From: Haliotis rubra
Lineage: Eukaryota
Reading direction: 5' to 3'
DNA length: 64,000 nucleotides
NCBI RefSeq assembly: GCF_003918875.1
Contig: NW_025767575.1
Location: 248,001 to 312,000 of the forward strand
Shown: positions 31,477-63,612 of the stretch, piece by piece
Numbering within the stretch: the first letter of the stretch is position 1
Layout: each line of letters opens with the position of its first letter
Position numbers and translations under genes: made by a program
Notes under the pieces: generated by a model
Seen by the model: only the letters and a program-made list of their open reading frames with translations
What the model was told of the DNA's origin: nothing
The model's database searches: none

Positions 31477-31514
31477 CGTAGTGAACTGGTTATATGGGCT
31501 GCGGATGCAGCAGC

Positions 31515-39399: not shown

Positions 39400-40530
39400 A
39401 CACAGTGTAGTAACCAACACAATGTAGTAACCAACAAAGTGTAGTTACCAGCACAATATAGTACCCAGCACAATGTAGTAACCACCAGCACAATGTAGTA
39501 ACCAGCACAATGTAGTAACCACACAATGTAGTAACCAGCACAATGTAGTAACCAGCACAATGTAGTAACCAGCACAATGTAGTAACCAGCACAATGTAGT
39601 AACCAGCACAAAGTGCAAGTAACCAGCACAATGTAGTAGTAACCAGCATTAACCAGCACAATGTAGTAACCAACAACAACAGTGTAGTAACAATGTAGTA
39701 ACCAGCACAATGTAGTAACCAGCACAATGTAGTAACCAGCACAATGTAGTAACCAGCACAATGTAGTAACCAGCACAATGTAGTAACCAGCACAATGTAG
39801 TAACCAGCACAATGTAGTAACCAGCACAATGTAGTAACCAGCACAATGTAGTAACCAGCACAATGTAGTAACCAGCACAATGTAGTAACCAACACAGTGT
39901 AGTAACCAGCACAATGTAGTAACCAGCACAATGTAGTAACCAGCACAATGTAGTAACCAGCACAATGTAGTAACCAGCACAATGTAGTAACCAGCACAAT
40001 GTAGTAACCAGCACAATGTAGTAACCAGCACAATGTAGTAACCAACACAATGTAGTAACCAGCACAATGTAGTAACCAAGTAACCAACACAATGTAGTAA
40101 CCAGCACAATGTAGTAACCAACACAATGTAGTAACCAACACAATGTAGTAACCAGCACAATGTAGTAACCAGCACAATGTAGTAACCAGCACAATGTAGT
40201 AACCAGCACAATGTAGTAACCAGCACAATGTAGTAACCAACACAATGTAGTAACCAACCAGCACAACACAAGTAACCAAGCACAATGTAGTAACCAACAC
40301 AATGTAGTAACCAACACAATGTACACAATGTGGTAACCAACACAATGTAGTAACCAACACAATGTAGTAACAAATGTAGTAACCAACACAATGTAGTAAC
40401 CACACAATGTAGTAACCAAACACAATGTAGTAACCAATGTTGTAAGCACAATGTAGTAACCAACACAATGTAGTAACCAGCACAATGTAGTAACCAGCAC
40501 AATGTAGTAACCAGCACACTGTAGTACCAG
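39400..40530. repeat. Minisatellite, 17-bp unit
   Basis: CACAATGTAGTAACCAG repeated more than 55 times. Confidence 0.97.
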
Positions 40531-41147
40531 GCACAGTATAGGAACCAGTCTTCTCTGCAGCAAATGTCAACAGAAACTCACTGTTCTACTAGGAAGCTCA
40601 AGACAGCTGATAATGCACTTTAACCAAAGTGACTAATGATTGCAAGGTTTCCGGACTAACAGGGCTTTGAAGCATTAAAATAACACTGGTAACTTTATTT
40701 CACGCACCACCCTGAAACTAACCCAACCCAAGGAAACACTACACTCTGCCTAGTTTCCGGGTCTCCATTACATCCTCACTGCCATTCAGTCTTTTGATTG
40801 ATCCAAAAATCAGATCGACACCGCGACTAACGACTGAGTAATATGACACCTGTTGAGAGGTTCCGACGCTAGGGATGAGGACGAGGATGTGTATCACTAT
40901 TCAGGAATGTATTGTTCTCCCTCCAGGCTGCTGGGAAGGTACCATATGAATGGCAATATCAAATGTATATTTGGTCCTTAGTAGTAATACTGAACCATAA
41001 GTTGTCTTCTATTACCTATCTATGCCCACCATCTCACGTCGTATTACCAGTACCTGCTATACAACACGTCATGTAATCTGAACACTTGTTAGACATCACC
41101 GGGAAGTACCTTGCTGGCGACTTGAAATGCATGCCGCTGTCAATTAC

Positions 41148-41664
41148 GTCATACCTCTGTGGGCCATACCTCTGTGTAGGTCATACCTCTGTGTAGGTCG
41201 TACCTCTGTGTGGCCGTATCTCTGTGTAGGTCATACCTCTGTGTAGGCCATACCTCTCTGTAGGTCATACCTCTGTAGGTCGTACCTCTGTGTAGCCGTA
41301 CCTCTGTGTAGGTCGTACCTCTGTGTAGCCGTATCTCTGTGTAGGTCATACCTCTGTGTAGGTCGTACCTCTGTGTAGGCCATACCTCTGTGTAGGTCAT
41401 ACCGCTGTAGGTCGTACCTCTGTGTAGGTCGTACCTCTGTGTAGCCGTACCTCTGTGTAGGTCGTACCACTGTGTAGCCGTATCTCTGTGTAGGTCATAC
41501 CTCTGTGTAGGTCGTACCTCTGTGTAGGTCATACCTCTGTAGGTCATACCTCTGTGTAGGTCATACCTCTGTGTAGGTCATACCTCTGTGTGGGTCGTAC
41601 CTCTGTGAAGGTCGTACATCTGTAGGTCGTACCTCTATGTAGGTCGTACCTCTGTGTAGGTCGT
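41148..41664. repeat. Minisatellite, 17-bp unit
   Basis: GTCATACCTCTGTGTAG repeated. Confidence 0.95.
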
Positions 41665-43649: not shown

Positions 43650-45080
43650 GCTGTAGACTTGCACGGAGATACGACGCTCTTGTAGACTAGTACGGAAATA
43701 TGCCACTCTTGTAGACTCTTGTAGACGTGCACGGAAATACAACACGCCTGTAGACTAGTACGGAAATATGCCGCTCTTGTAGTTTTGCACGGAGATGCGA
43801 CACTCTTGTAGACTAGCAAGGAGATACGGCACTTTTGTAGACGTGCACGGAAATACGCCGCTCTTGTAAACGTGCACGGAAATACGCCCCTCTTGCAGAA
43901 TAGCACGGGGATACACGGCCCTCTTGTAAACGTGCACGGAAATACGCCCCTCTTGCAGAATAGCACGGGGATACACGGCCCTCTTGTAAACGTGCACGGA
44001 AATACGCCCCTCTTGCAGAATAGCACGGGGATACACGGCCCTCTTGTAAACGTGCACGGGGAAATAAACGCACGGAAATACGCCCCTCTTGCAGAATAGC
44101 ACGGGGATACACGGCCCTCTTGTAAACGTGCGGAAATACGCCGCTCTTGTAAACGTGCACGGAAATACGCCGCTCTTGCAGAATAGCACGGGGATACACG
44201 GCCCTCTTGTAAACGTGCACGGAAATACGCCCCTCTTGCAGAATAGCACGGGGATACACGGCCCTCTTGTAAACGTGCACGGAAATACGCCGCTCTTGTA
44301 AACGTGCACGGAAATACGCCCCTCTTGCAGAATAGCACGGGGATACACGGCCCTCTTGTAAACGTGCACGGAAATACGCCCCTCTTGCAGAATAGCACGG
44401 GGATACACGGCCCTCTTTGTAAACGATGCACGGAAATACGCCGCTCTTGTAAACGTGCACGGAAATACGCCGCTCTTGCAGAATAGCACGGGGATACACG
44501 GCCCTCTTGTAAACGTGCACGGAAATACGCCCCTCTTGCAGAATAGCACGGGGATACACGGCCCTCTTGTAAACGTGCACGGAAATACGCCGCTCTTGTA
44601 AACGTGCACGGAAATACGCCCCTCTTGCAGAATAGCACGGGATACACGGCCCTCTTGTAAACGTGCACGGAAATACGCCCCTCTTGCAGAATAGCACGGG
44701 GATACGGCCCTCTTGTAAACGTGCACGGAAATACGCCGCTCTTGTAAACGTGCACGGAAATACGCCCCTCTTGCAGAATAGCACGGGGATACACGGCCCT
44801 CTTGTAAACGTGCACGGAAATACGCCCCTCTTGTAAACGTGCACGGAAATACGCCGCTCTTGCAGAATAGCACGGGGATACACGGCCCTGTTGTAAACGT
44901 GCACGGAAATACGCCCCTCTTGCAGAATAGCACGGGGATACACGGCCCTGTTGTAGACGTGCACGGAAATACGCCCCTCTTGCAGAATAGCACGGGGATA
45001 CACGGCCCTCTTGTAAACGTGCACGGAAATACGCCACTGTGTCGACGTGCACGGAGATACGGCACTCGTGTAGACAAGCA
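43650..45080. repeat. Minisatellite with 29-bp and 31-bp monomers forming 60-bp higher-order units
   Basis: CTCTTGTAAACGTGCACGGAAATACGCCC alternating with CTCTTGCAGAATAGCACGGGGATACACGGCC. Confidence 0.95.
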
Positions 45081-46030
45081 CGGACGGAATACGTACACAG
45101 GTAGGTGGCTCTACAATGTCTCTTAATTCAGTGATGACATACAGTGTTTGGCAGGAGGAGTGGCCAGGCTCTCGGGGCTGTATTCTAATGGCGTAATTTC
45201 TGTCTCTGGCAAAATCACAGGTAATGTGCATTAAACTATTTTTTCTAAACATTATGTTACTGGTGGAAAATATGATATCCTCCGTATGTAAGCCCGGTGT
45301 TTTATACGGGAGAAATGGCAGTCTCATCAACGGTATGGTCCAGTAATATTCTCTGCCACCTTCAGGAAATGTCAAGTATTTTTTGACGAACTAAACCTCT
45401 TTTAAAATGCTTGCAGTCGGCTCTTTATGATAATACATGTATAATGAAATTAGAGAAAGCTGCATTTTACACATTTGATGATTTTAGATAAAATTACGCA
45501 TTTGAGAAAAAGACACTTTAAATTGTGATTCTTTAAAAACTGATGACTTCGACCAATTCGGTCAGAGATTCCCAATTGATATGCATTGAGAACAATACCG
45601 AACTCAAAATCGCGTGCAGTTTCACATATAGGTTAAAGAAAGTAACGGATTCACAATAAAATAGGTGTCACAATTATTGCTATCTTATACCATTAGTGAG
45701 ATTGTAAATAGTCTAACATTGTAACATATACATCTGACTGAGATTTGCATTATAGTCCGTTTGAAGCGGACCGATGAATTGCTATCTAACTCGAAAAATG
45801 GAACAGCCAGGTGTACGCGAAGCACGTGCACAATTCAACAAAGTTATTGATTCATTTACCCGTGCTGTGCCGTCTCAATCCTTCCTCGCACACCTGGCTG
45901 TTCCTCTCTTGAACTCCTCCCTCGTAACAAATAGTGAACTGGGTCAATACTTTAATGATAGTTTGTTAAACAACCTTATTATTTTTAGGACATAAATTCT
46001 ACAAAAAACCCACAGAGTTGGTCTTATGTT

Positions 46031-46429
46031 AGTAGTGTACAGCGTCACCCTGGGGTATTTTTCAAGATGGCGGCATATCCGGCGTGTGCGTGCGCATCGC
46101 GATGGCGTCACTTCCGGTTCCGGCGTGCGCGCGCATCCCGATGATATCACCTCCGGCCAAGATGGACGCCCTGTTCAAGATGGCGGCCCATCCGGTGGGA
46201 TCTCGCGGGGTCTCGTGGGATCTCGCGGAGTCTCGCGGGATCTCGCGAGAGTGGACACAATTCAAGATGGCGGACGGACGGAACGGACGGGAAGGAGAGA
46301 GGGAGGGAGGGAGGGAGGGAGAGTGGTGAGAGGACGATGGCGTGTCTAGAGAAGTGTGTGGTTCAAGCTTTGTCACTCAGGTTTTCTTTCGAGCCGGATG
46401 GGTGGCCCTGAAAAGAGCCGTTGGCATGG
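46031..46429 (+). repeat. Left terminal inverted repeat of the Polinton-like element
   Basis: Reverse complement of 53366-53740 apart from one divergent internal block. Confidence 0.93.
46383..46424 (-). terminator. Histone-mRNA-type 3' stem-loop plus HDE-like element in the left TIR
   Basis: Minus strand CCAAC-GGCTCTTTTCAGGGCC-ACCCA-TCCGGCTC-GAAAGAAA; hairpin at 46404-46419. Confidence 0.85.
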
Positions 46430-46439
46430 CAAGGCATGT

Positions 46440-46893
46440 TTAACACCGGCATAGCAGATCAAGGCCTCGGAAGATAAATTTCCCTGGGCAGACATCATCA
46501 TGTAGGTGGTGCGCTCCCTTCCTGATCCCTTCCCCACAGTAGACACACGTAAAACACGGAGCTCCTGGGACTACATCGAAGCGATTGGAGGGAAAGGCTT
46601 TGAAGCAGGTAGGGCCATTTTGACGACCATTTTGGTAGGCTTTCAGATGTAGCTGCCGTTGGTGGTGGTGGTCGGGCTACCGTTTCTGCTGACGTTGTTG
46701 GTGGTGGGGCTGCCGCTGCTTCTGCTGCCGTTGTCGGTATCAGTACCGGTTCTGATGCTGTTGTACCCTCTTCCATTTTGATACCGGTCTTCACTTGCAA
46801 GCTTGGGCTACATCGTAGACATTGCTTTCTACCGCAGTTATTTCGGTAAGGTGTTGGTAGGATGACTTCAACTCGTCTGTGTCCATGTTGCAT
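46440..46893 (-). pseudogene. Element terminal gene: Thr/Pro/Ala-rich region and a probable frameshifted C-terminal C2HC zinc finger
   Basis: ORF 46498-46893 downstream of TATA at 46924-46931; the adjacent frame reads CVYCGEGIRKGAHHLHDDVC and stops at 46440-46442. Confidence 0.45.
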
Positions 46894-47021
46894 CGAGATA
46901 GCCCTTACTTACAAATGCTGGAGTTTATATAGGCGACGAGACATCGATGACGTGTCGTCGATGACGTGGCACTGATGACGTCATGGTCGCACGTGAGGGT
47001 GGTGACGTGGCACCGGTGACG

Positions 47022-47312
47022 TCATGGTCGAGCGTGAGGCGTTGGCGCCGCCATGGCCTTTGATTGGCTGATTGTTTGCAAAAGTGTTCTAGTGGGTGCT
47101 GTGGGGTACAACTGCTTTAAGGAAGGTCTTTGTTTGGAGGAGGAAGCAGAGGGAGGAGCACTTAGCCTTTCGTACAACCGTTGCACACCCGATCCATGTT
47201 GTTTGGTGGGATCACGACCCATGGTGGTCAGGAGTGTTTTACGGATCGGTTTAAACAACCCTGTGGCAACAACACGTTTGCGGGGCCGGGCCTGTTTCCG
47301 TCTGTCTCTCAT
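47022..47312 (-). CDS. Small basic (Arg/Lys-rich) protein of unknown function, element-encoded
   Basis: 96-aa ORF MRDRRKQARPRKR...; upstream ATAAATA and TCAGTT initiator-like motif. Confidence 0.45.
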   Translation of the reverse strand: MRDRRKQARPRKRVVATGLFKPIRKTLLTTMGRDPTKQHGSGVQRLYERLSAPPSASSSKQRPSLKQLYPTAPTRTLLQTISQSKAMAAPTPHARP

Positions 47313-47778
47313 GACAGCTCTGGGTCAACTGATGGTAGGGTAGACGGTCGGCTCTATTTATCACTACTTGGGAATGTAAACGGTGGTGGGGTTGCAAAAG
47401 AGATGAATACGTACACAGTGCTCTTTGGCCGTGGTAGGTTTCAAGTCCAGGAACAAATAGGAATAAGAGCCAAAGTGGCATCCTCATAGGCTTCCCGAAG
47501 GAACATGGTAAAGGGATGACGTAACGTGAGTGGGGTGACCATGGCCTCCACCAGGTCTGTCCCTGACATAGTCCCTGACATAGTCTCTGACATAGTGTCC
47601 TGACAGACGTCTTACCATCCTGCAAGTTACACCGGAAATTACCTCCAAGAGCTAAGATCCTTAAAGATATAGAAGACCCAACCCATTGAAATTGAATTTA
47701 CATTTCAGTGATGAACAAAACAGGTTATGAATGAACAATAATGCATCAACACTACATCAACAACAGTACATCAACAGA

Positions 47779-48900
47779 TCACCACCTGTTCAGGTGATCC
47801 TGAGGATTGCAGGTACAACAAGGCAAGAATTCCATTTGTCCTGCATGAAAATGATTTTCATCGTTAAACATGGGGATGTCGATGATGGCCTCTGGCTCCT
47901 CTGGAGTCATCACTGAAGTCATCACCAGATCCGTCTGCAGAGTCATCACTGGAGTCGTCTCAGGAGCCACCACTGGAGCCGACTGCTCTGTTTCCGTTGT
48001 GACAGGCATCGGGAGTAGATCATACAGTTGTTGAAGATCTGGAGGTAACTCGTCATGGGGCTAGCAGGACTGATCCCTTGACCCTTCTTGCTCTCTTCAA
48101 CAATAGCACGGCTGGCTTGTTGATCGTTCTCCCACAAAGCCATCAACTGTTTCTTGGGAGTCCTTGGTGCTTTGAGACTCTTAGGCTTTCGGGGTGCCTT
48201 GGCGATTGTTTTAGTGGGTGTCTTGGGAAGGGGTACCTTCTTGGTGGAGACCTTGGTGGGGGCCTTCTTCTTCTTCTTCTTCTTCTTCTTTGGAGAAGTC
48301 TTGGCAGGAGTGGCCTGGGGTGGGGGTGGGGGTGTTGGGCGTCATGTCTGTGACCTCTGGATCGTTGGAGAACAAGGGTAGAGTGCAGGTGGCACGTTGA
48401 AGATCGTAGCTGGGCGGGTAAGCCCAGAGTTTCACCTGGAGTTTGTCCAGCAGCTTGATATAGGACGACCATTCCTCAGACTTGAATACGATGTGTAACA
48501 GCTTGCTGAGGTAAGTCTCCCCTGCATTTTCCTTGGCATGTGCATTGTCGATACCCATGAGTACCAAGGGAACAGAGTTGGTGGCGCTGTCGGAGAGGAG
48601 CTGTAAGAGGTCTTGGTGATAAGACATCCAGTTATAATCTTCCTCAGTCAACTCACAGAAGCGACCCATCAACCCATACAGTGTCTCTGTTTCAGGATGA
48701 ATAACCTCCAGCTTGCTAATGATCGACGGTAACTTTTGTTCCATCACTCGGATCTGGTCCTGGAGATCCATGTGGTTGGTCTTGTACAACTGGTTTTGAG
48801 CCATCATGTTGTTGTGGAGATTGGCGATGTCAGAAGCCAGGTCCTTTGCTTGCGAATTCATGTTGACGAAAGTAGAAGGGAGGTTGCCTGGAAATGCCAT
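47779..48900 (-). pseudogene. Element gene: N-terminal helical/coiled-coil region, Lys/Pro-rich H1-tail-like region, acidic Thr-rich end; probable frameshifts
   Basis: MAFPGNLP... from 48900; after the C-run near 48320 another frame reads TPAKTSPKKKKKKKKKAPTKVSTKKVPLPKTPTK...RTPKKQLMALWEND; TATA at 49030-49039. Confidence 0.55.
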
Positions 48901-49078
48901 CTTTAGACTTAGTTGGTGCAACTGATGACCCACTCGACTGATCCTGCGTATCTCTCTTCTAGATACGTTGCTACCACAAAGAGCAGCGTGAACAACATGA
49001 CTACGAATAACGATTTGGCCAGAAACGCCTATATATATACACACAGAGTGGTGTCACGTGGGTCGTCCATGGATGACG

Positions 49079-49366
49079 TCACTGAGTCTCGAGACCCAGT
49101 AATGTCATGGCTTCTGTCTCTCCACATTCCTCCAAAGCTTTGCAGAAGAGGGAGTAAGCTCTGGGTCCACGTCTGGGAAGCATATCTAACAATTCTCTGA
49201 CACAGTCAAAGGATGTTCGAGGTTTTTCGATAATCTCTGCCTTCATGAAGATGGTAAGGACTTTAAACTCCATCAGTTTGTCGACCACAGCCTCGAGCTG
49301 CTTGATATCTAGCACGAGGGCGGAACGATTCTCCCTAAGCCTATCGCGGTGAATGGGTTCGATCAT
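49079..49366 (-). CDS. CARD-only protein (caspase-2/RAIDD-like CARD)
   Basis: Intact 95-aa ORF with CARD pattern HR..L..NR..LV...VVD.L....VLT..M..EI....T....RELLD.LP.RGP.AY..FC.AL.E.G; own TATA and two TGACGTCA upstream. Confidence 0.85.
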   Translation of the reverse strand: MIEPIHRDRLRENRSALVLDIKQLEAVVDKLMEFKVLTIFMKAEIIEKPRTSFDCVRELLDMLPRRGPRAYSLFCKALEECGETEAMTLLGLETQ

Positions 49367-49799
49367 TTTCTTTCTTAGATAATAGACTCTGGCAGAAACT
49401 CCTCTCTATATACACAGGGTCGTGATGACGTCATAGGGTGTGTGTGACGTCATGGGTGACCATGGCATCCACCACGTCTGATCCTAACAGGATAAAAAAA
49501 AGGGTTGAGGGTGACCATGGACTCCACCAGGTCTGGCCCCTGAACAGAGACGACTCAACACATTTCATTTGAAATAACATTGAATGGATGAACAATGCAA
49601 ACATGGTATCGCTTAAACATCATTAGATCAACAGTACATTTACAGAGCATGTCATGGGGTACAATAAAAGTCCATTTGTTTTTTTTATTCCCCATTCAAA
49701 AAACCCTTAGGGGGCATAAGCAGGAGGGGCCACCCCTTCAGGTCCATAGGACTGATAGTAGAACTGATGGCACTCCATCTTTGGCTGAGTCTCGGGCGT

Positions 49800-50280
49800 C
49801 ATGGTCGTGACCACTGAATCATAGGTTGGCGGCTTAAAAACTTTGTCAGTGATAAGAAGTCCTCATTGATGGGCTCTAAGTCCCACACTTGATTTCCCGG
49901 AACCTCGGAGGGGAATCCAAATATTCTGTCACTATGATGTTGTAATTGCCGATGATAGAAGGCAACTCCCTTGGCCAGGAGAAAGAAGGGAGGTCGTCTC
50001 GGGATGTGTTCTCTGGATCTTAGAATTCAGGCTTACAGACGACGTAACTGATACAAAAGTCCTCTTCGAAGATGCCCAAGTCCTTCACCTGATAATGCTC
50101 TTCCTGGAGGATTTCAAGGAGCCGCTCAGTGGCTGTATCCGATGTATCGAGGTATTCTGTCACCAAGATCTTGTGCTGATTGTTGATGAGAGAATCCTTG
50201 TACTTCTGTACTGCTTGCCAAACAATGGTGTAGGTAGGAGAGGAACAAGAAGAAAAAAAGGGTTTGCCTGGAGATGTCAT
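49800..50280 (-). pseudogene. Element gene of unknown function with an internally duplicated motif; premature stop
   Basis: ILVTEYLD...VKDLGIFEEDF then, past the stop at 50020, IIVTEYLD...VWDLEPINEDF; TATA at 50332-50338; minus-strand AATAAA near 49685. Confidence 0.5.
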
Positions 50281-50398
50281 CTTCAACGGCTGAGCTGGTG
50301 CGACTGATGACCCACTTGACTAATTCTGAGGTTTTATAGGCAGCAACAGCAGCGCGAGCTATGACGTCACTTCAAATCGCGTCACGATTTTTTTGGGT

Positions 50399-52552
50399 TC
50401 ACTCTTTATAGCCATAGGGGAGAGTTTCCACGGGGACTTCTTGTGGGTCGTACTGGACTCGACCTTTGGTGTAGACCATTCGATACTCTTTGGTGGTGTC
50501 GTTGGACAGCAACGCATTGCCCTGGCGAAGTCCTCCGCGAATGATGCGGTGCGAGTATGGGACAGTGATGCTGACTTGATCCCTCTGACAGACGAGGTTC
50601 TTTATGTTGTCAAAGTGGACATGTTGTCGCCCTGTGATTCAGAGTAAATCCTCGGACTTTGCTGATGCCTACACTACCGTCAGGTTGAGGATGGCGCAGC
50701 TTGTAGGTGTAGTTCTTGGGTCCTCTCGAGACAAAGGCGTGAATGCTGTTGCCCCCTCCCAGTTCATCGGTCAGCTCCCCTAAGGTATCTCCCAGTGGAG
50801 GGTTCTAGCTTAGTGCACGGTGAATGTAGATGATACTGTATGTATCAAAATAGAGTACGCGTCGATCCAAGGGTTTCAAGTAGGAATACAGCTTGAGATG
50901 GGCTTATGCTGTCACCCAGGCTGCAATGACCACATTGTGGGCGGGATGCGTGTCGTGAAATTCTGACTTAGGTTCGTAAGTGACACACACGAGGGCCTCG
51001 TTGACGAAGTGCACATCCTTTACCACACACCGTTCATCCCGGAGGAGGGCAAAGAACCTCTCAGGGGAACTGTATTCGGTCTTGTCAAACCTGACGCTTT
51101 GGCCAAACTTGCCTCAATGGTTGTTCAGGCAAGCTTTAGCTAGGGCACGTAGTCCTGGGTTTTTGCGGATGTGAGCAGGATCCAAGGTGACTCCTTCTTT
51201 TCATGAATCTCCCTGATGTAGGCGTCTGGGTCTGAACAGCCTTCTGGAAATCCGCTGGCCTCTTGCTTGATCTTGAAGAAATTGTTCACATACTTGGCAA
51301 ACAGTCCTCCCTCTTGAGAGTCAGGGTCGTAGGTGGTGAGCGTGTCAAAGTGGCAAGCCTCAAAGACGTGAAGCACTTGATAGCCGCACTCTCGAACGGC
51401 ATACTGAAGCTCCTTGCTGACATACGTGCCGATCCATGCTCGGTCTTCATCCCTGTGGGGGCAGGAACCAGCCAACACAGCACGACACAGAGAAAATAAC
51501 AACTTGCTCTGGACGCGGTTAGGAAGAACAGGATGGTAGAGGTCGGTGGGTTGTAAGACTCGGCACTGGATGAGGCCATGTAACTCGAACAAGTCAGCCA
51601 TGGGATGATGATCTTTGATCTCGGGATGACCCACGGGGTAAGTACCATACTTGCACATGTAAGGGTACAGTGAACAAACGTCCACATATTTCATTTCTTC
51701 ATCTTCTTTCGCTCCGTAGTACAACTTGGTGGCGTTTGTGCGTCCTCCAAAGAAGGCATCTCTGGGATCCAACGGTTCAGGCATGTAGTCATGAGGTCCT
51801 TGCAGTGTGGTCAGGAACGCTCTCAGATCAGCGTTGTCTTTCTGTTCTTTCCGAAAATCACATTTCCACAGGGTCACCACTTGGTGGATGTCAGAATGTT
51901 GGCGTAACACCACCAGTCGGTACCTTGTATGATGGTATCATTCCCAAGGTGCTGTACCCATGGTACTGTGGGGTTCACATCGACCTGTCTTGTAACAGTG
52001 AGTACATCCATGACCAGGGCAGGGGCAAAGCAGAGTTGATCATCATTCTTGATTTGTAAGATGCATTGTTTCTTTTCCAGGAAAGTGTTTAAGCCAATGA
52101 TGTACCTTGGCCGTCCATGTCCCTTGCCTACACGATCAGGATCTTCTACATGCAGTTAGTATATATCCATGGTCTCACCGATATACAAGTCGTGGTTACT
52201 TTGCTGTACTTTTTCCACTTTGGCCATGATGCGTTCCCCCCTGGAGGTCACCCATCTGCTGACATGTGATTGGGATGTCTGAATCCAGGGCTGGATGTTT
52301 CAGGGCCAATCCCACGCGATCATCATCCTGGCCGTTCATATTGTTTCTCAGGTCTAACAAGACAGCATCAAACTGCTCTCTGAGAATGACGGGGAGGTCT
52401 TCAGGTTGTTGATGCTGCAACCAAGCTGGACTGAACTTCAGCTTATAGCGATGAGTGTTGCTCCGGAACTTCTTCTGTGTAAGTAGGGACGTTGGCTCCG
52501 ACCAGTAAAGTTCTTCTTCTTCCTCTGCTTTGTTCATTCGTGGTGACTGCAT
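50399..52552 (-). pseudogene. Protein-primed family B DNA polymerase (Polinton-type), internally deleted and disrupted
   Basis: LDPRDAFFGGRT, YVDVCSLYP, YPVGHP, KIKQEASGFP, GKFGQ, YFDTYS (for YxDTDS), LGELTDE, GPKNY, KVRGF, terminal TLPYGY; N-terminal domain at 52196-52552. Confidence 0.92.
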
Positions 52553-52585
52553 GGTGAGAATTGACAAGACCCACACTGAGCCTGG

Positions 52586-52791
52586 TTTATATAGACAACG
52601 TCACCCTATGACGTCACAATAGGTCGTCCTAAGCGTGGCAGTGCGCATCACAAGCTCATTTGGTGTTGAATGACGTCACAAGTTTTTCTCTCATGGGCAT
52701 GCCCTAGGACGTTACACTAGTCTGTCGACCCATGAAACGAGAATGTAAGGCGATTCGCGCCAAAGTGACGTCATCGACTCCAGCTATAAAA
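52586..52791. promoter_or_regulatory. Divergent promoter for PolB and the zinc-knuckle gene: two TATA boxes, three TGACGTCA, one E2F-type site
   Basis: TTTATATA 52586-52593 (minus), TGACGTCA at 52609, 52671, 52766, TTCGCGCCAAA 52754-52764, TATAAAA 52785-52791. Confidence 0.7.
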
Positions 52792-52841
52792 ACTCGAGGT
52801 TTTCCAGCTCTCCCCATTAGTTGCTCACTGAAACTGGAAGC

Positions 52842-53341
52842 ATGCAGTCGTCTCCCGCCTCCGCCTCCTTCCGTTGCCGCCTGTGCGAAACAGATGACCA
52901 CAGTTATCTGCACTGTCCCAAGGTGACCTGTACCGAGTGTGGTGCTCAAGGCCATCGTCATTACGTATGTCCCAAGAAGGCCACGGACAGTAACAAGCAC
53001 GATAACAACACCTGCTACAACTGCGGACAAAAAACGAAGGCCATCTCAGTTACGACTGTCCACATCCCAGCCGCCACTGTGGTAAAGAGGACCATAAGAG
53101 TATGACCTGCACCTACAAGACCCAGAAACGTGCGGCTCCCGTCAACCAGTCAGCTCAACCAACAAAGAAAGTGGGTAAACATGAAGACAATCGTCTACTG
53201 GCTCTACTCCATGACAAGGTCATCCTCGTTGAAGACCGTATAGACACCGTGCACTCTCTACTTCAATGTGTCTTGGAGTTTGTTGAACCCATGGACGATT
53301 CCAGCAGCACCGCCTCGAGTGGACCACCATCACCACAATAG
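52842..53341 (+). pseudogene. Multi-CCHC zinc-knuckle protein (nucleocapsid/CNBP-like) with C-terminal helical segment; one frameshift near 53030
   Basis: CRLCETDDHSYLHC, CTECGAQGHRHYVC, CYNCGQ/EGHLSYDC, degenerate RHCGKEDHKSMTC; joins the 53102-53341 frame. Confidence 0.8.
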
Positions 53342-53365
53342 ATACCTCGGTGATGTCTCACCCAC

Positions 53366-53740
53366 CCATACCAACGGCCCTTTTCAGGGCCACCCATCCC
53401 AGATCGAAAGAAAACCTGAGTGACAAAGCTTGAACCACACACTTCTCTAGACACGCCATCGTCCTCTCACCACTCTCCCTCCCTCCCTCCCTCTCCTTCC
53501 CGTCCGTTCCGTCCGTCCGCCATCTTGAATTGTGTCCACTCTCGCGAGATCCCGCGAGACTCCGCGAGATCCCACCGGATGGGCCGCCATCTTGAACAGG
53601 GCGTCCTTCTTGGCCCGCACACGCCGAAACCGGAAGCACCGGAACCAGAACCCGAGTAACCTCCCCTTATCGGAAGTGATGCCATCTTGGGTCACGTGAC
53701 CCATCTTGAAAAAGACCCCAGGGTGACGCTGTACACTACT
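53366..53740 (-). repeat. Right terminal inverted repeat of the Polinton-like element
   Basis: Reverse complement of the left TIR; ends ACTACT followed by the TSD. Confidence 0.93.
53371..53414 (+). terminator. Histone-mRNA-type 3' stem-loop plus HDE-like element in the right TIR
   Basis: CCAAC-GGCCCTTTTCAGGGCC-ACCCA-TCCCAGATC-GAAAGAAAA; hairpin at 53376-53391, 34 nt after the stop at 53341. Confidence 0.88.
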
Positions 53741-54019
53741 TATGTTTTTATTAGGATAGGCGTTTCATTGAGTATTATATGTGTATTAGTTTTCGAGTTA
53801 GATTGCAATTCATCAGTTCGCTTTAAGCCAAAGGGACTATACTTGTTTTGAATTATATATTTGAATGACGGACGTGCAGCGCCTAATGTTCTCTCACTTT
53901 TACGTAAACATACTATTCCAAAAAGGAAACGCATAACCCAGAAATCTGTTGCGAAAAGGTTGCATTTTCAAACATGTATATCTCGTCCACAAATATACTT
54001 TAAGAAATGAATTTTTACA

Positions 54020-54410
54020 TCAGGTTAGAAGAAGGTAATGTCTATACAACCAAGTGGATAATATTAGATAACAGAGACGTTGAGCGCGATGGTGACCACG
54101 TAGCATGGTCCCGACGTCGGATCTCCTGGCTCTCAGTCCAGTCTCTCTCAACGTGTTCCGTACAGTTTGACCGGATATCCTCCGAAGTCCAGGCACGCTG
54201 GCAGCTGTGCTCTCACCCGTGGCAGTACCATCAGGCAAATGTAGTACCCGGGTGTAACGATCTTGGGCTACAGTGGTGACTCGAGGTCTGCCTGTACGGA
54301 GACGGTCATTTGTTATACCTGTTTGGTTGTAACGAGCTGCAAGCCGTGATTTAGTGCTCAGACTAACAGTCAGACGCCTGGCAAGAGGAGATTGGTAATT
54401 TTCCAGCGTG
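54020..54410 (-). mobile_element. Tc1-family transposase N-terminal (HTH) remnant
   Basis: RRISGQTVRNTLRETGLRARR...HHRAQRL. Confidence 0.75.
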
Positions 54411-54469
54411 CATTCGTAAACTTTGGTCGTACTTGGTCTGTGTTAGAGAGTAGTAGTTCTGACCGTACT

Positions 54470-54566
54470 GCACAATGTGTTAAGCCCATTTCTGGTGTCC
54501 CCCGCCGTGATATTGCTGGAATATTGCTAAAAGCGGCGTAAAACCAAACTCAGTCAGTCAGTCAGT
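54470..54566 (+). mobile_element. 5'-truncated SINE family B
   Basis: Matches the 19866-20014 body; TSD TCTGACCGTACT. Confidence 0.85.
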
Positions 54567-56485: not shown

Positions 56486-57279
56486 TATAAATATATCAGA
56501 GTCGGGCGTCTATGGATACATAGCGGTCACTGACATGAACGCTATGCAGTACCTCCATAGGCCGCAATGGTGGAAATCCTTTGTCGCACTTTCGCGCACT
56601 CGTTACGACTGAGTTTTGAATCACGTGACCTGTGACGCGAAGGGGATATCCCTCCCAAAAATAGTAACACACGTGTTCCATACCTCGTTGCTTGTTGACA
56701 ACACATGTTCATACAATTTAGGCAATTAAAACGATTGTAAGGAGATTTTCGTTTCCAATCTAGACTGACTGACCACCCCTGCTTTTTCAACAGCTGTTTT
56801 CAAAGGAATTGCTGTTGAGTTTTCAATGCTTCATATAATATTAGATTATTGCTGTCACCTTCACAGTTCCATGGGTGTCTCTGTACTACTCCTGAATATT
56901 TGCCTACAAAACACAGTTTACTAATAAGACTTATTAGAATTTAGGAATTAAATAATTATCGAGTTCACAAATCGATTATCTAAAATTTCATTTGTACCAT
57001 AGGATTCAAAATGTCCCCGCTCATATGTGAGCGATCGACTGAGATGTTTGATGGCTTGTAAATATATATTTTTGTATATTTTGATAACGAAAATAGGGCG
57101 CACGTGTAGGTATAAGTACAAAGAAGTAATTCATATAAGTTTTTCGAGCGCAAAAATCGTAACGAGTGCGTGAAAGTGCGACAAAGGATTTCCACCATTG
57201 CGGCCTATGGAGGTACTGCATAGCGTTCATGTCAGTGAACTCTATGTATCCATAGACGCCCGACTCTGATATATTTATA
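56486..57279. mobile_element. MITE with ~125-bp TIRs
   Basis: ATATATCAGAGTCGGGCGTCTATGGATACATAG...CGTTACGA at left is the reverse complement of 57157-57279; no coding capacity. Confidence 0.85.
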
Positions 57280-58879: not shown

Positions 58880-60053
58880 CCAGAAATTATTGAGAATTTT
58901 AGGAATATGTTTAATTGAATTTCTAGTATAAACAACCTTGACCAGCTATCAAGTGCTTGGTTTCATTCAAGAGAGACAACTCCGTTAATCCTTTTTTCAT
59001 TAGTTTGTGAAGAGTTATCAAACTCTGTTTACTTGCTAGCAGACGACATTTTCAGTGATCCTCAGTATGGATGATTTAGAGAAGAGGAAGTTGATTTTAG
59101 AGTATTATAACAATGACATCAGATCAGGTAAAGTGATTTCAAGTAGAACAGGCATCCCTTTGTCCACTGTTTATCGTGTTTTGAAAAATATTGCAAATGG
59201 ATATGGCATTGAGCACCAGGGAGGCGCAGGTAGGCCCAGAAAATTGACTGTCGGTGACAGGACTCGGCTTGGTATTCTTGTTTCTAAAAACAAACGAAGG
59301 AGTTTAGAAAACGTAAGGCTGGATATGATTGATAGAGGTACTGTGGCTGTCTGTAAGGAGACAATTAGAACTGAGCTGCATGCAATGGGTTGGCAGAAAA
59401 GTCGAGGAATTCCATCACCGATCATGAAACCTGAACAAAAGGAGCGAATGTTGAACTGGTGCTTACAGCATAGAAATTTTAACTGGGACAATGTGAAATT
59501 CTCAGATGAAAGTTCTGTGTGGCTGTTTCCTAATACACTGAAATTCTGCACCAAACAAACTGAAAAACCTTTGTATCAGCGCCCAAAGTACAGTCCGAAA
59601 TTTAACGTGTGTGGTGGCATATCTGTGTTAGGGACAACGCCTCTCTGTGTATTTGAAGGTAATATGAACAGTGAGCGGTACGCAGATATTCTCGAGGGAC
59701 ATTTACTTCCATCTGCTCACGTGTTCTATGGTAAAAAAATTATTTTCCAGCAGGACAACGACCCAAAAGTGTCAATAAGAAAAATTTGACAAATATTGCT
59801 GAAATGAAAGAAGAGGTGGTCCGATATTGGGACAGTATGGACCACGACTTTCTAACTTCTTTGATCAGTAGTATGCCCCGCCGCATTGAAGCCTGCATTG
59901 CTGCCCATGGTGACTTGACAAAATACTAACTGTTCACCTGTCTTTGAATCTGGAGTTATGTTCTGCTAATATTCACATTTAATACGTGAGTAATGAGTGA
60001 AAAAAAGAAAAGAATTACATTCTTAAATTCTCAATAATTTCTGGTTGTACTGT
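58880..60053 (+). mobile_element. Tc1/mariner DNA transposon, internally deleted
   Basis: TIR CCAGAAATTATTGAGAATTT.AGGAAT versus ATTCTTAAATTCTCAATAATTTCTGG; transposase ORF inside. Confidence 0.9.
59055..59928 (+). pseudogene. Tc1-family transposase lacking the SPDLNPIE segment
   Basis: HTH, GRPRKLT, FSDES, FQQDNDPK, then out-of-frame C-terminus SMPRRIEACIAAHGDLTKY*. Confidence 0.9.
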
Positions 60054-60639: not shown

Positions 60640-63612
60640 GCTGCCGTGGTATACGAGAACATGAACTGCCGTGGTATACGAGAACATGAACTGCCGTTGT
60701 AAATGAGAACATGAACTACCGTGGTATACGAGAACATGAACTGCCGTGGTATACGAGAACATGAACTGCCGTGGTATACGAGAACATGACCTATCGTGGT
60801 ATATGAGAACATGAACTGCCGTGGTATATGGGAACATGAACTGCGGTGGTATATGGGAACATGAACTGCCGTTGTAAATGAGGAACATGAACTACCGTGG
60901 TTTACGAGAACATGAACTGCCGTGGTATACGAGAACATGAACTGCCGTGGTATACATATGAGAACATGAACTGCCGTGGTATACAAGAACATGAACTGCC
61001 GTGGTATACGAGAACATGAACTGCCGTGGTATACGAGAACATGAACTGCCGTGGTATACGAGAACATGAACTGCCGTTGTAAATGAGAACATGAACTACC
61101 GTGGTATACGAGAACATGAACTGCCGTGGTATACGAGAACATGAACTGCCGTGGTATACGAGAACATGAACTGCCGTGGTATACAAGAACATGAACTGCC
61201 TTGGTATACGAGAACATGAACTGCCGCGGTATACGAGAACATGAACTGCCGTGGTTTATGGGAACATGAACTGCCGTGGTATATGCGAGTGAGTGAGTTA
61301 AAATTTAAAGTCACATTGGCAATATTTCAGCCATATAGTGACTAAAACTAGTTCTAAATTCATAATACATACAGATAATATATAAAACCCTGTCAACGAA
61401 GGACAGTAAAACCACTAGATTATCACAAAATGTGTTAAAACTAGCTAGCATATATCTTTAAAAGTAGAAAACTATTTTTGGACAATACAATGTAAAAATG
61501 GGATATATATCGCCAGCAACTGAAGGCTGATCACCATGCTAGGGACCATAGGGACTTACAGTACTTTGGCTACCTACATGGACCCTAGCTGGATTTACAC
61601 CATGCCTTCAGCCACTGGTGATTGTAGTGAACTTTAGCCATTATTTAAAACAACAATTATTCCACGATTAAAATATTTTTGTAGGTCCAAATTGACTTGG
61701 AAAATTGTGGGACTTACGTACCCTCTCAGGAGGACTGGTATATGCGAACATGAACTGCCGTGGTATATGAGAACATGAACTGCCGTGGTATATGTGAACA
61801 TGACCTACCGTGGTATATGAAAACATAACCTACGCTGGTATATGAGGACATGAACTGCCGTGGTATATGAGAACATGAACTGTCGTGGCATATGGGAACA
61901 TGAACTGCTGTGATATATGAGAACATGAACTGCCGTGGTATATGAGAACATGACCTACCGTGGTATAGGAGAACATGAACTGCCGTGGTATATGAGAACA
62001 TGAACTGCCGTGGTATATGAGAACATGAACTGCCGTGGTATATGGGAACATGACCTGCCGTGGTATATGAGAACATGACCTACCGTGGTATATGAGAACA
62101 TGAACTGCCGTGGTATATGAGAACATGACCTACCGTGGTATATGAGAACATGAACTGATGTGGTATATTAGAACATGAACTGCCGTTGTATATGAGAACA
62201 TGAAGTGCCGTGATATATGAAAACATGAACTGCCGTAGTATATGGGAAAATGAACTGCCGTAGTATATGGGAAAATGAACTGCCGTGTTATATGCGAACA
62301 TGAACCGCCGTTGTATATGAGTACATGAACTACCGTGGTATATGAGAACATGGACTGCCGTGGTATATGTGAACATGGACTGCCGTGGTATATGTGAACA
62401 TGAACTGCCGTGGTATATGTGAACATGAACTGCCGTGGTATATGTGAACATGAAATGCCGTGGTATATGAGAACATGGACTGCCGTGGTATATGTGAACA
62501 TGAACTGCCGTGGTATATGTGAACATGAAATGCCGTGGTATATGTGAACATGAACTGCCGTGGTATATGTGAACATGAACTGCCGTGGTATATGAGAACA
62601 TGAACTGATGTGGTATATTAGAACATGAACTGCCGTAGTATATGGGAAAATGAACTGCCGTAGTATATGGGAAAATGAATTGCCGTCTTATATGCGAACT
62701 TGAACTGCCGTTGTATATGAGAACATGAACTGCCGTGGTATATGAGATCATGAACTGCCGTGGTATATGTGAACATGAACTGCCGTGGTATATGGAAACA
62801 TGACATGCCGTGGTATACGAGAACATGAACTGCCTCGGTATACGAGAACATGAACTGCCGTGGTGTATGGGAACATGACCTACCGTGGTATATGAGAACA
62901 TGAACTGATGTGGTATATGAGAACATGAACTGCTGTGGTATATGCGAACATGAACTGCCGTGGTACATGGGAACATGAACTGCCGTGGTATATGAGAACA
63001 TGAACTGCCGTGGTATATGAGAACATGAACTGCCGTGGTATATGCGAACATGAACTGCCGTGGTATATGGGAACATGAACTGCCGTGGTATATGGGAATA
63101 TGAACTGCCGTGGTATATGAGAACATGAACTGCCGTAGTATATGGGAACATGAACTGCCGTAGTATATGAGAACATGAACTGCCGTGGTATATGCGAACA
63201 TGAACTGCCGTTGTATATGAGTACATGAACTGCCGTGGTATATGCGAACATGAACCTGCCGTGGAACATGAACTGCCGTGGTATATGAGTACATAAACTG
63301 CCGTGGTATATGCGAACACGAGCTACCATGGTATATGGGAACATGAACTGCCGTTGTATATGAAAACATGACGTGCCGTGGCATATGAGAACACGAACTG
63401 TCGTGGTATACGAGAACATGAACTGCCGTTGTATATGGGAACACGACTTACCGCGGTATATGAGAACATGAACTGATGTGGTATATGGGAACATGAACTG
63501 CTGTTGTATACGAGAACATGACCTACCGTGGTATACGAGAACATGAACTGCCGTGGTATATGGGAACATGAACTGCCGTGGTATATGTGAACATGAACAG
63601 CCGTGGTATATA
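60640..63612. repeat. Minisatellite, 25-bp unit, ~100 copies, interrupted at 61289-61735
   Basis: GAGAACATGAACTGCCGTGGTATAY repeated. Confidence 0.97.
61289..61735 (-). mobile_element. Retroposon 3'-end (probable LINE 3' UTR) inserted into the minisatellite
   Basis: (ACTC)n tail; flanked by TGGTATATGCGA on both sides; homologous to 26170-26330. Confidence 0.75.

What the first reader, a model, noticed from the sequence alone, without database searches (positions are those of the whole stretch)
53339..53414. Top candidate: Polinton-like TIRs encode histone-mRNA 3'-end signals for non-histone element genes
Seen: 34 nt after the zinc-knuckle stop codon lies CCAAC GGCCCT TTTC AGGGCC ACCCA, followed 9 nt later by GAAAGAAAA. 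The same cassette sits at the inner edge of the other TIR (46404-46419), after the other outward-pointing gene; TIR similarity ends ~10 bp inside the hairpin. There is no histone-fold ORF nearby and no AATAAA between stop and hairpin. Known: a 6-bp stem/4-nt loop with CCAA- and -ACCCA flanks plus a purine-rich downstream element is the SLBP/U7 snRNP signal, regarded as nearly exclusive to replication-dependent histone mRNAs and giving non-polyadenylated, S-phase-restricted, often maternally stored transcripts. Inference: the element uses this pathway to time its terminal genes to S phase or oogenesis, and placing the signal in the TIR gives it to whichever gene is terminal. I know of no description of this in Polintons, but cannot search the literature.
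Basis: partly seen in the sequence, partly recalled or inferred. Interest (0 to 1): 0.95.

Follow-up and report, generated by a model that had tools for sequence, protein, structure and literature searches.

The report
Histone-type mRNA ends on Polinton genes
A decayed virus-like mobile element (Polinton) in what is probably an abalone genome carries, after each of its two outward-facing small genes, the RNA hairpin and downstream signal that normally end only histone mRNAs. The same signal follows non-histone genes in relatives from three abalone species and in two distant metagenomic Polinton-like genomes, so these elements seem to have borrowed the histone mRNA-ending pathway.

Summary
A histone 3' stem-loop (HSL) with a purine-rich downstream element lies at 53371-53417 (+), and a mirror copy lies at 46378-46424 (-). 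Rfam Histone3 scores are 33.8 and 27.6 bits (gathering score 34). These are the only two such sites in the 64 kb window.

They form the inner edges of the ~395-bp terminal inverted repeats of a 7,710-bp element (46031-53740). That element has a 6-bp target duplication and a remnant protein-primed DNA polymerase, so it is a decayed, non-autonomous Polinton.

Each HSL is in sense orientation just after a small non-histone gene: a zinc-knuckle gene on the right and a Cys-rich gene on the left.

The same cassette follows zinc-knuckle, Cys-rich and BIR genes in Polintons of three Haliotis species. It also follows small genes in a 16-kb metagenomic adintovirus-like genome (pPolB 47% identical). A variant of it, with an added AATAAA, follows genes in a second metagenomic contig. 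Several of these HSLs score above Rfam's gathering score.

The stem shows compensatory changes. Conservation peaks on the hairpin and dips in the flanks.

Functional histone-type 3'-end processing is therefore the best explanation (about 0.7). It is not shown: no transcript data were available. I found no prior description in the literature I could search.

The parts
46025..46030 (.). Left copy of the 6-bp target-site duplication (TATGTT)
   Evidence: the same hexamer directly abuts both element termini.
46031..46429 (.). Left terminal inverted repeat. The outer terminus begins AGTAGTG. It holds three exact CAAGATGGCGG motifs. Its inner ~50 nt are the HSL/HDE cassette.
   Evidence: 88-98% identity to the right arm, with indels; for the motif.
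46378..46424 (-). Left histone-type 3'-end cassette. 5' flank CCAAC at 46424..46420, stem-loop at 46419..46404 (one G-U pair), ACCCA at 46403..46399, purine-rich element at 46390..46382.
   Evidence: Rfam Histone3 27.6 bits, E 1.7e-4; own model R1 56.4 bits; folds at -8.4 kcal/mol.
46440..46878 (-). Remnant of the small Cys-rich terminal gene. It is broken: two pieces in different frames and no start codon in the last piece. Its stop codon lies 15 nt before the HSL flank.
   Evidence: homologous to an intact 171-aa gene in L003 (70% identity over the C-terminal 57 aa). No Pfam family.
48211..49366 (-). CARD-domain gene carried by the element. The CARD ORF is 49079-49366, followed by a 277-aa ORF without a domain hit. 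No HSL follows it.
   Evidence: Pfam CARD 7.8e-15. The CARD ORF is conserved in L001, L003 and L004.
50375..52576 (-). Remnant of the protein-primed family-B DNA polymerase. It is broken: four matching pieces in three frames. About 625 of 1342 residues of an intact relative are covered, and a large part is missing.
   Evidence: Pfam DNA_pol_B_2 8e-17 on ORF 51140-51913; 4438 relatives; tblastn counts and outer bounds.
52577..52841 (.). Divergent promoter-like spacer between the polymerase and the zinc-knuckle gene. It has a TATA box at 52785-52791 for the + strand gene and several TGACGTCA motifs.
   Evidence: Read directly. Conserved in L001. The promoter role is inferred.
52842..53341 (+). 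CCHC zinc-knuckle gene (about 165 codons), broken by one frameshift. Its TAG stop is at 53339-53341.
   Evidence: About 50-56% identical to the intact 165-aa gene of L005 (called genes of 134-199 aa in L006-L009). PDB matches are to retroviral nucleocapsid, Lin28 and Air2 knuckles only.
53371..53417 (+). Right histone-type 3'-end cassette. CCAAC at 53371-53375, stem-loop at 53376-53391, ACCCA at 53392-53396, purine-rich element at 53406-53414.
   Evidence: Rfam Histone3 33.8 bits, E 7.8e-7; R1 58.3 bits; folds at -11.4 kcal/mol, z -3.2.
53366..53740 (.). Right terminal inverted repeat. It holds two exact CAAGATGGCGG motifs.
53741..53746 (.). Right copy of the 6-bp target-site duplication (TATGTT)

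Best explanation
The two hairpins are genuine histone-type 3'-end signals: a stem-loop of the kind SLBP binds, followed by a purine-rich element of the kind that pairs with U7 snRNA. A lineage of animal Polinton/adintovirus-like elements has attached these signals to short, apparently intronless accessory genes. Those genes encode a CCHC zinc-knuckle protein, small Cys-rich proteins, BIR proteins and, in distant relatives, other small proteins and a kinase.

In an active element, RNA polymerase II would transcribe each small gene from its own compact promoter. The pre-mRNA would be cut a few nucleotides after the hairpin by the host's histone processing machinery instead of being polyadenylated.

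The expected consequences are inferred, not shown. The mRNAs would be non-polyadenylated and SLBP-bound. Their production, translation and decay would follow the host's histone mRNAs, meaning S phase and possibly maternal stores. The signal is also very compact (~50 nt) and stops transcription before it runs out of the element.

In the window's family and in the L005-L008 family the cassette forms the innermost part of the terminal inverted repeat, so both terminal genes share it. Elsewhere it travels with individual genes.

The copy in the window is a decayed, non-autonomous 7.7-kb derivative. Its cassettes are inherited relics that are still well formed.
For: SHOWN

(1) Sequence and fold match the family.
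- Rfam Histone3 gives 33.8 and 27.6 bits in the window.
- Relatives reach or pass the gathering score of 34: L001 35.4; L004 35.8, L005 36.4 and 34.1; L011 34.7; L054 35.5 and 35.0.

(2) Position.
- All 14 canonical copies in the window and Haliotis loci, the 3 in L011 and the 4 in L054 lie downstream of ORFs in sense orientation.
- Where measured, the stop codon lies 5-236 nt before the flank in the window and Haliotis loci (mostly under 60 nt) and 13-30 nt before it in L011 and L054.

(3) None of the 8 window, L001 and L003-L005 copies examined has AATAAA or ATTAAA from -300 to +80.

(4) Conservation across independent lineages.
- pPolB identity falls to 47% (L011) and about 40% (L054), yet the hairpin persists.
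- Mean pairwise identity among 10 independent copies: 0.34 upstream, 0.75 5' flank, 0.87 stem, 0.91 loop, 0.73 3' flank, 0.30 spacer, 0.53 purine-rich element, 0.40 beyond.

(5) Covariation.
- 99% of cells are paired.
- Two of six pairs show changes on both sides: G-C to A-U, and C-G to U-A in two lineages.
- One G-U pair is a valid pair only on the sense RNA strand.

(6) The cassette moves with genes.
- A 68-nt copy (hairpin plus downstream element) was duplicated behind an internal BIR gene in L005 and L008.
- L011's three copies are not in any detectable inverted repeat.

(7) Copies in visibly decayed genes carry hairpin-breaking mutations (L003, L004, L007). Intact genes carry canonical hairpins. 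This is as expected if selection acts only in live elements.

(8) None of the genes served by these signals that were scanned has a histone fold (Pfam).

FROM ESTABLISHED KNOWLEDGE
- The defining nucleotides are all present: G at stem position 2, a U-A pair on top, U at loop positions 1 and 3, an A-rich 5' flank and an ACCCA 3' flank.
- The purine-rich core starts about 15 nt after the stem, the usual spacing for the U7 'ruler'.
Against: - There is no transcript evidence of any kind. The real 3' ends, the absence of poly(A), SLBP binding and U7 dependence are all untested.
- The host's own histone hairpins and its U7 snRNA were not available. Pairing of the purine-rich element with U7 is therefore unverified.
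- The window's two copies score just below Rfam's curated threshold.
- The element in the window and several relatives are dead copies.
- In L005 the hairpin lies 236 nt after the zinc-knuckle stop codon, which is long for a histone-type 3' UTR.
- In L054 every hairpin has a U-G top pair and is followed by AATAAA. That lineage may polyadenylate instead, or as well.
- Most Polinton-like contigs surveyed show no such signal. The trait is therefore lineage-restricted. Only about ten of those contigs were long enough to be informative.
- The many Haliotis copies are partly non-independent because they share inverted-repeat sequence.
Confidence: 0.7

Rival explanations
1. The hairpin works as an RNA element but not as a U7-dependent cleavage site. 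For example, SLBP binding could give stability, export or translation. Or the hairpin could act as a roadblock or terminator that stops read-through into the inverted repeat and host DNA, with the real 3' ends made by polyadenylation elsewhere or by both routes.
For: In L054 each hairpin is followed within about 10-20 nt by AATAAA. This resembles histone genes known to carry both kinds of signal. The purine-rich element is less conserved than the hairpin (0.53 against 0.87-0.91).
Against: In the window, L001 and L003-L005 no poly(A) hexamer lies within 80 nt downstream. A purine-rich AAAGA core keeps its distance from the stem while the spacer between them diverges freely.
Confidence: 0.15
2. 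The hairpins are functionless relics. An ancestral element once captured a host histone gene or its 3' flank, the coding part was lost, and the hairpin has been copied passively with the inverted repeat.
For: The hairpin sits inside a repeat that is homogenised or copied as a block. Many of the Haliotis copies share identical downstream sequence. The window copy is dead. A divergent pair of small genes ending in hairpins (L003, L004, L011, L054) recalls the layout of a histone gene pair, which fits an origin by capture.
Against: Passive relics would not explain any of the following:
- survival across lineages whose polymerases are only 40-47% identical;
- a conservation peak exactly on the hairpin, with flanks at 0.30-0.34;
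- compensatory pair changes;
- an orientation and distance that always fit a preceding ORF;
- re-use behind newly acquired genes (BIR, kinase).
Capture explains the origin, not the maintenance.
Confidence: 0.08
3. The hairpin is a DNA-level feature of the element's ends, for example a binding or structural site for the integrase, the terminal protein or the polymerase. Its likeness to the histone signal would then be coincidental.
For: In the window and in L005-L008 it marks the exact inner boundary of the inverted repeat.
Against: - Copies occur outside any detectable inverted repeat and inside elements.
- One inverted repeat of L001 lacks it.
- It always follows a gene in sense orientation.
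- The G-U pair in the window's left copy pairs only in the sense-strand RNA.
- The match extends beyond the hairpin to both flanks and to a spaced purine-rich element. Chance expectation is 0.02 per window.
Confidence: 0.04

Closest known systems
Histone 3' UTR stem-loop (Rfam RF00032) with the histone downstream element: the SLBP/U7 snRNP processing signal of metazoan replication-dependent histone mRNAs
   Same: - A 6-bp stem with a 4-nt U-rich loop.
- G at the second stem position and a U-A pair on top.
- An A-rich 5' flank and an ACCCA 3' flank.
- A purine-rich element about 15 nt after the stem.
- A position tens of nucleotides after the stop codon of a short gene without apparent introns.
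- No poly(A) hexamer nearby.
- Rfam scores around or above the gathering score.
   Different: The upstream genes are not histones. They encode zinc-knuckle, Cys-rich, BIR, kinase and unknown small proteins. The signals sit in a virus-like mobile element, in some families inside its terminal inverted repeats. In human cells SLBP cross-linking recovered essentially only histone mRNAs (PMC4604434).
Polintons/Mavericks and adintoviruses (protein-primed polymerase, retrovirus-like integrase, packaging ATPase, capsid genes, terminal inverted repeats, 6-bp target duplications)
   Same: - The window element has the 6-bp duplication, AG...CT termini, inverted repeats and a pPolB remnant.
- The relative L005 (16,165 bp) also has a 6-bp duplication and carries pPolB, a chromodomain integrase and an A32-like ATPase.
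- L011 carries the same core genes.

   Different: The window copy lacks any detectable homologue of the relatives' integrase, ATPase or other core genes, and its remaining genes are broken. Histone-type 3' signals are not mentioned in the adintovirus description (PMC8502044). They were also absent from every paper my searches returned.
Histone genes that carry both a stem-loop and a poly(A) signal (for example H2A.X, PMC7807067; from memory, some invertebrate histone genes)
   Same: In L054 each hairpin is followed closely by AATAAA.
   Different: The genes are not histones. The Haliotis and L011 cassettes show no such hexamer, apart from one ATTAAA that lies between the stop codon and the hairpin of gene C in L011.

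Membership tests
Histone 3' stem-loop / HDE signal (Rfam Histone3, RF00032) | A 6-bp stem with a 4-nt loop, plus the conserved nucleotides: G at stem position 2, a U-A top pair, U at loop positions 1 and 3 | tested here: met
   All window and Haliotis copies keep these. The left window copy has one G-U pair.
Histone 3' stem-loop / HDE signal (Rfam Histone3, RF00032) | Score at or above the curated gathering score (34 bits) | tested here: inconclusive
   The window copies score 33.8 and 27.6 bits, both below. Homologous cassettes in relatives score 34.1-36.4, above.
Histone 3' stem-loop / HDE signal (Rfam Histone3, RF00032) | Sense orientation in a short 3' UTR, soon after the stop codon, with no poly(A) signal | tested here: met
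   The stop-to-flank distance is 29 nt on the right and 15 nt on the left. No AATAAA or ATTAAA from -300 to +80.
Histone 3' stem-loop / HDE signal (Rfam Histone3, RF00032) | A purine-rich downstream element at the canonical distance, complementary to the host U7 snRNA 5' end | tested here: inconclusive
   An AAAGA-type core sits 9-11 nt after ACCCA in the 14 window and Haliotis copies and at a similar distance in L011.
Histone 3' stem-loop / HDE signal (Rfam Histone3, RF00032) | The upstream gene encodes a replication-dependent histone | tested here: not met
   Pfam finds CCHC knuckles, BIR, a kinase or nothing, and never a histone fold. This failed criterion is the point of the finding. The element fits the RNA family but not its usual gene context.
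Histone 3' stem-loop / HDE signal (Rfam Histone3, RF00032) | SLBP binding, U7-dependent cleavage after ACCCA, and a mature mRNA without poly(A) | not testable with these tools
   No transcript or binding data were within reach.
Polinton/Maverick | 6-bp target-site duplication and terminal inverted repeats with AG...CT ends | tested here: met
   TATGTT on both sides; ~395-bp inverted repeats.
Polinton/Maverick | Protein-primed family-B DNA polymerase | tested here: met
   PF03175, 8e-17. The closest relatives are Haliotis and metagenomic Polinton polymerases. Only a broken remnant is present.
Polinton/Maverick | Retrovirus-like integrase, packaging ATPase, capsid proteins and protease | tested here: not met
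   tblastn with the called genes of L005, L010 and L011 finds none in the window element. It is therefore a non-autonomous deletion derivative. L005 and L011 carry integrase and ATPase.

The most novel reading that the evidence does not exclude
Some animal Polinton/adintovirus-like elements express their accessory, host-interaction genes (zinc-knuckle, Cys-rich, BIR, kinase) as histone-like mRNAs: non-polyadenylated and processed by SLBP and U7. These would be the first natural non-histone clients of that pathway. The effect would be to tie expression of the element's genes to host DNA replication or to maternal mRNA stores. The cassette may have come from a captured divergent histone gene pair whose coding parts were replaced.
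Probability: 0.55. Interest if true: 0.9.

Novelty: new variant of a known kind. Interest (0 to 1): 0.82.

Why it matters
Replication-dependent histone mRNAs are regarded as the only cellular mRNAs that end in a stem-loop instead of a poly(A) tail. SLBP cross-linking in human cells found no other clients (PMC4604434). A mobile, virus-like element that places this signal behind non-histone genes, and keeps it across lineages whose polymerases are only 40-47% identical, would be a natural exception.

It would show that the pathway can be hijacked. It would give Polintons and adintoviruses, whose gene regulation is essentially unknown, a concrete and testable expression logic. It would also provide natural non-histone reporters for how the stem-loop alone governs the timing and decay of an mRNA.

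There is a practical point for annotation. Histone3 hits in animal genomes need not mark histone genes, and poly(A)-selected RNA-seq may systematically miss these element transcripts.

Tried and rejected
- The zinc-knuckle ORF of the window (94 aa) found no relatives. The length filter excludes the intact proteins of 165-199 aa. An alignment headed by the intact L005 protein then found homologues, in Haliotis only.
- L002 (H. rufescens, polymerase 57% identical) has no hairpin and no inverted repeat.
- L009's zinc-knuckle gene has no hairpin. Its 3' UTR loses similarity to those of its relatives shortly before the place where the hairpin would be; the cause was not determined.
- L010 and L012, two other Polinton-like metagenome contigs, have no hairpin.
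- A survey of 84 more polymerase-bearing contigs (573 kb) gave clear hits only in L054 and weak ones in L075 and L076. Most contigs were too short to include the element ends, so absence there means little.
- An exact-pattern scan of IMG/VR gave one contig (L097) with two hairpins. Its ORFs have no Pfam family and its nature stayed unresolved.
- The 131-aa ORF 46498-46893 was rejected as the left terminal gene.
- Literature searches for a prior description returned nothing relevant. Subscription journals are not covered.

A slip, declared. After I worked out in thought where the zinc-knuckle reading frame changes and read on in the second frame. My scripts printed the bounds of ORF pieces, from which break places could be inferred.

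The N run at 20015-20146 was left untouched. Nothing in the window or the loci looked human.
Full report
OBSERVATION

On the + strand the zinc-knuckle reading frame stops at 53339-53341. The flank CCAAC follows 29 nt later (53371-53375). Then come a 6-bp stem with a 4-nt loop (53376-53391), ACCCA (53392-53396), nine nucleotides, and GAAAGAAAA (53406-53414).

The mirror copy is on the minus strand, with its stem at 46419..46404. It differs by one C-to-T change that turns a C-G pair into a G-U pair.

- Rfam finds nothing in the window at gathering thresholds.
- A permissive scan of 45500-54500 gives Histone3 (RF00032) at 53371-53417, 33.8 bits, E 7.8e-7. It also gives 46424-46379 (-), 27.6 bits, E 1.7e-4. 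The gathering score is 34.
- A degenerate hairpin pattern matches only these two places in 64 kb. The shuffle expectation is 0.02.
- Both fold as drawn.

WHAT THE ELEMENT IS

The two hairpins are the inner ends of a pair of ~395-bp inverted repeats (46031-46429 and 53366-53740). The repeats end in AGTAGTG...CACTACT, and the same hexamer, TATGTT, flanks them on both sides. That is the hallmark of a Polinton/Maverick insertion.

Inside the 7,710-bp element are:
- a remnant protein-primed polymerase on the minus strand (Pfam PF03175, 8e-17);
- a CARD-domain ORF (7.8e-15);
- a CCHC zinc-knuckle gene on the plus strand, divergent from the polymerase, with a TATA box and TGACGTCA motifs in the spacer between them.

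The copy is dead and non-autonomous.
- The polymerase matches an intact relative in four pieces in three frames, covering about 625 of 1342 residues.
- The zinc-knuckle gene has one frameshift.
- The left terminal gene is in two pieces.
- No homologue of the integrase, the ATPase or any other non-polymerase gene of the relatives L005, L010 and L011 is present.

The surrounding window is repeat-rich animal DNA, with LINE reverse transcriptases, a Tc1-like transposase and many minisatellites.

RELATIVES

The polymerase ORF has thousands of relatives. The closest are annotated in Haliotis asinina. I fetched loci around these and around homologues of the zinc-knuckle gene, which exist only in Haliotis cracherodii and H. 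rufescens.

Eight of the nine Haliotis loci contain related Polintons. Seven of them carry canonical hairpins:
- L001: one
- L003: one
- L004: one
- L005: three
- L006: two
- L007: two
- L008: two

Three more are degenerate copies in visibly decayed genes.

L005 is a 16,165-bp element with its own 6-bp duplication and 577-bp inverted repeats. It carries the polymerase, a chromodomain integrase, an A32-like ATPase and BIR genes. As in the window, its inverted repeats begin exactly at the hairpin.

Every hairpin is in sense orientation behind a small ORF. There are four kinds.
- The zinc-knuckle gene, which is intact in L005-L008.
- A Cys-rich gene of 171 aa, which is intact in L003. Its stop codon is 15 nt before the flank. 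This is the true left terminal gene of the window.
- A second Cys-rich gene of 107 aa.
- A BIR gene that lies inside the element, not in the inverted repeat.

In the eight copies examined (the window, L001 and L003-L005) no AATAAA or ATTAAA lies from -300 to +80. None of the genes served has a histone fold.

Two distant elements settle the question of whether this is a quirk of one repeat family.

L011 is a 16,062-bp metagenome contig. It has an intact 1342-aa polymerase (47% identical to the window's ORF), an integrase, an ATPase and a zinc-knuckle gene divergent from the polymerase. It holds three Histone3 hits of 34.7, 32.3 and 30.1 bits. They lie 21-30 nt after the stop codons of three small genes near one end. 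Two of those genes are a divergent pair around a CCAAT-rich spacer. No inverted repeat was detectable in that contig.

L054 is an 18.8-kb metagenome contig whose polymerase is about 40% identical. It holds four hits of 35.5, 35.0, 28.1 and 26.6 bits. They lie 13-15 nt after the stop codons of a protein-kinase gene, its divergent 124-aa partner and two tandem small genes. In L054 the top pair of the stem is U-G, and an AATAAA follows each hairpin.

A survey of 84 further polymerase-bearing contigs found nothing else convincing. Only about ten of those contigs reach far enough from the polymerase to be informative.

EVIDENCE OF CONSTRAINT

An alignment of 17 cassettes (A5) gives the following.
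- 99% of stem cells are paired.
- Two of the six pairs change on both sides: G-C to A-U once, and C-G to U-A in two lineages.
- Sliding the partner column by one to three positions destroys the pairing.

Among ten copies taken as independent, mean pairwise identity runs as follows:
- 0.34 upstream
- 0.75 in the 5' flank
- 0.87, 0.91 and 0.87 in stem, loop and stem
- 0.73 in the 3' flank
- 0.30 in the spacer
- 0.53 in the purine-rich element
- 0.40 beyond

That is the profile of a histone signal, not of a passively copied repeat. The G-U pair in the window's left copy pairs only in the sense RNA.

In L005 a 68-nt unit, consisting of the hairpin plus the downstream element, has been duplicated behind the BIR gene. 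This marks out the functional unit.

HOW IT MOST LIKELY WORKS

The following is inferred from the established SLBP/U7 pathway. Each small gene is transcribed from a compact promoter. SLBP binds the hairpin. U7 snRNP pairs with the purine-rich element about 15 nt after the stem. The transcript is cut after ACCCA and is not polyadenylated. The mRNAs would then share the fate of histone mRNAs: made and translated in S phase, degraded afterwards, and possibly stored maternally.

For a self-replicating DNA element that is a plausible advantage. So is a 50-nt terminator that prevents read-through out of a tightly packed genome. Placing the cassette at the inner edge of the inverted repeat would let the two ends keep identical signals. 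This is a family-specific arrangement, not the principle.

None of these steps is shown. I had no transcript data, no host U7 and no host histone genes.

RIVALS

1. The hairpin may act on RNA without U7 cleavage, or alongside polyadenylation. L054 hints at this.
2. It may be a functionless relic of a captured histone flank. Capture is a likely origin, given the histone-pair-like layout of divergent small genes. It does not explain the maintenance.
3. It may be a DNA-level feature of the termini. This is contradicted by the internal copies, the constant sense orientation and the G-U pair.

COMPARISON AND NOVELTY

As an RNA motif this is a member, or near-member, of Rfam Histone3. The defining context, a histone gene, was tested and is not met, and that is what makes it interesting.

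- I found no paper that links the histone stem-loop with Polintons, adintoviruses, transposons or viral genes.
- The adintovirus description does not mention it.
- A 2026 survey of the pathway's evolution reports no SLBP or other histone 3'-end processing proteins in large DNA virus genomes, and does not mention non-histone genes or transposons.
- SLBP cross-linking in human cells recovered only histone mRNAs.
- The library searched omits most subscription journals, so prior description cannot be excluded.

SLIP AND LIMITS

After I located the zinc-knuckle frame change in thought and read on in the second frame. My scripts printed the bounds of ORF pieces. I stopped, joined nothing and report only counts. 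The N run was left alone. Nothing looked human.

VERDICT

The signal is real, conserved and gene-linked. The timing and the mechanism are untested.
- Confidence in functional histone-type 3'-end processing in active relatives is about 0.7.
- Interest is 0.82.

Noticed in passing
window 46063-46273 and 53517-53594; L001 7113-7180 and 16849-16982; L005 4995-5075 and 20955-21035: The motif CAAGATGGCGG occurs five times exactly in the window, only inside the two inverted repeats and always pointing inwards. From memory it resembles a YY1 site. It recurs 8 times in L001's repeats and 4 times in L005's, although the repeats of these families are otherwise dissimilar. Its role is unknown: promoter, replication origin or protein binding.
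   Followed up: partly
window 49079-49366 (-); L001 12497-12868; L005 6390-6857 and 18801-19145; L054 2890-3738: These Polintons carry cargo genes related to cell death and signalling. A CARD-domain gene is present in the window's family. BIR (IAP-like) genes are present in the L005-L009 family. L054 has a protein kinase and a weak PRANC-like gene. The CARD gene has no hairpin behind it.
   Followed up: partly
L003 15421-16329; L004 18903-19917; L011 2004-2781; L054 2890-4195: Hairpin-ended small genes often form divergent pairs around a short spacer of 82-250 bp, which is CCAAT-rich in L011. This is the layout of a histone gene pair. It may hint that a histone pair was captured and its coding parts replaced.
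   Followed up: no
L005 5898-6165, 6960-7165, 11535-11706, 19516-19783: A promoter-like module of about 170-270 bp with CCAAT boxes is repeated, in both orientations, at four places in the element. Three of these lie just upstream of the hairpin-ended genes. Promoter and terminator therefore both look modular.
   Followed up: no
L006 7455-10749; L007 9340-10501: These look like miniature derivatives. Only 3.3 kb and 1.1 kb separate two outward-facing hairpins, leaving room for little more than the terminal gene(s). A second zinc-knuckle copy in L007 (about 17450-18086) has a hairpin with a broken top pair.
   Followed up: partly
L054 4874-5395: Three tRNA genes (Trp, His, Val) lie directly after the tandem hairpin-ended genes, about 2 kb upstream of the polymerase in this Polinton-like contig.
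   Followed up: no
L005 13421-14323 and 17459-18361: A 903-bp inverted duplication, 99% identical, lies inside the element. It includes the start of the integrase gene, so this is an internal rearrangement.
   Followed up: no
L097 1660-1680 and 2634-2679: An IMG/VR contig (UViG 2716885016_000001) has two canonical histone-type hairpins on one strand. The ORFs around them have no Pfam family, and no histone was found. It is unresolved whether this is viral, whether the hairpins lie in UTRs, and what the host is.
   Followed up: partly
window 13832-15527, 18490-19052, 23750-25318, 31511-31936, 36275-36935, 39401-41664, 43652-45084, 60641-63611: The window has an unusual density of minisatellite arrays, with periods of 15-75 nt and up to 3 kb long. 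These account for the long ORFs that are open in several frames at 14.4-15.5, 39.3-40.6, 43.6-45.4 and 62-63.6 kb.
   Followed up: no
window 697-3703, 21902-23593, 59055-59789, 56486-57279: Other mobile elements in the window: two LINE-like reverse transcriptase/endonuclease stretches, a Tc1/mariner-like transposase ORF, and a pair of 123-nt inverted repeats (98% complementary) 548 nt apart that looks like a small foldback or MITE.
   Followed up: no
   Followed up: no
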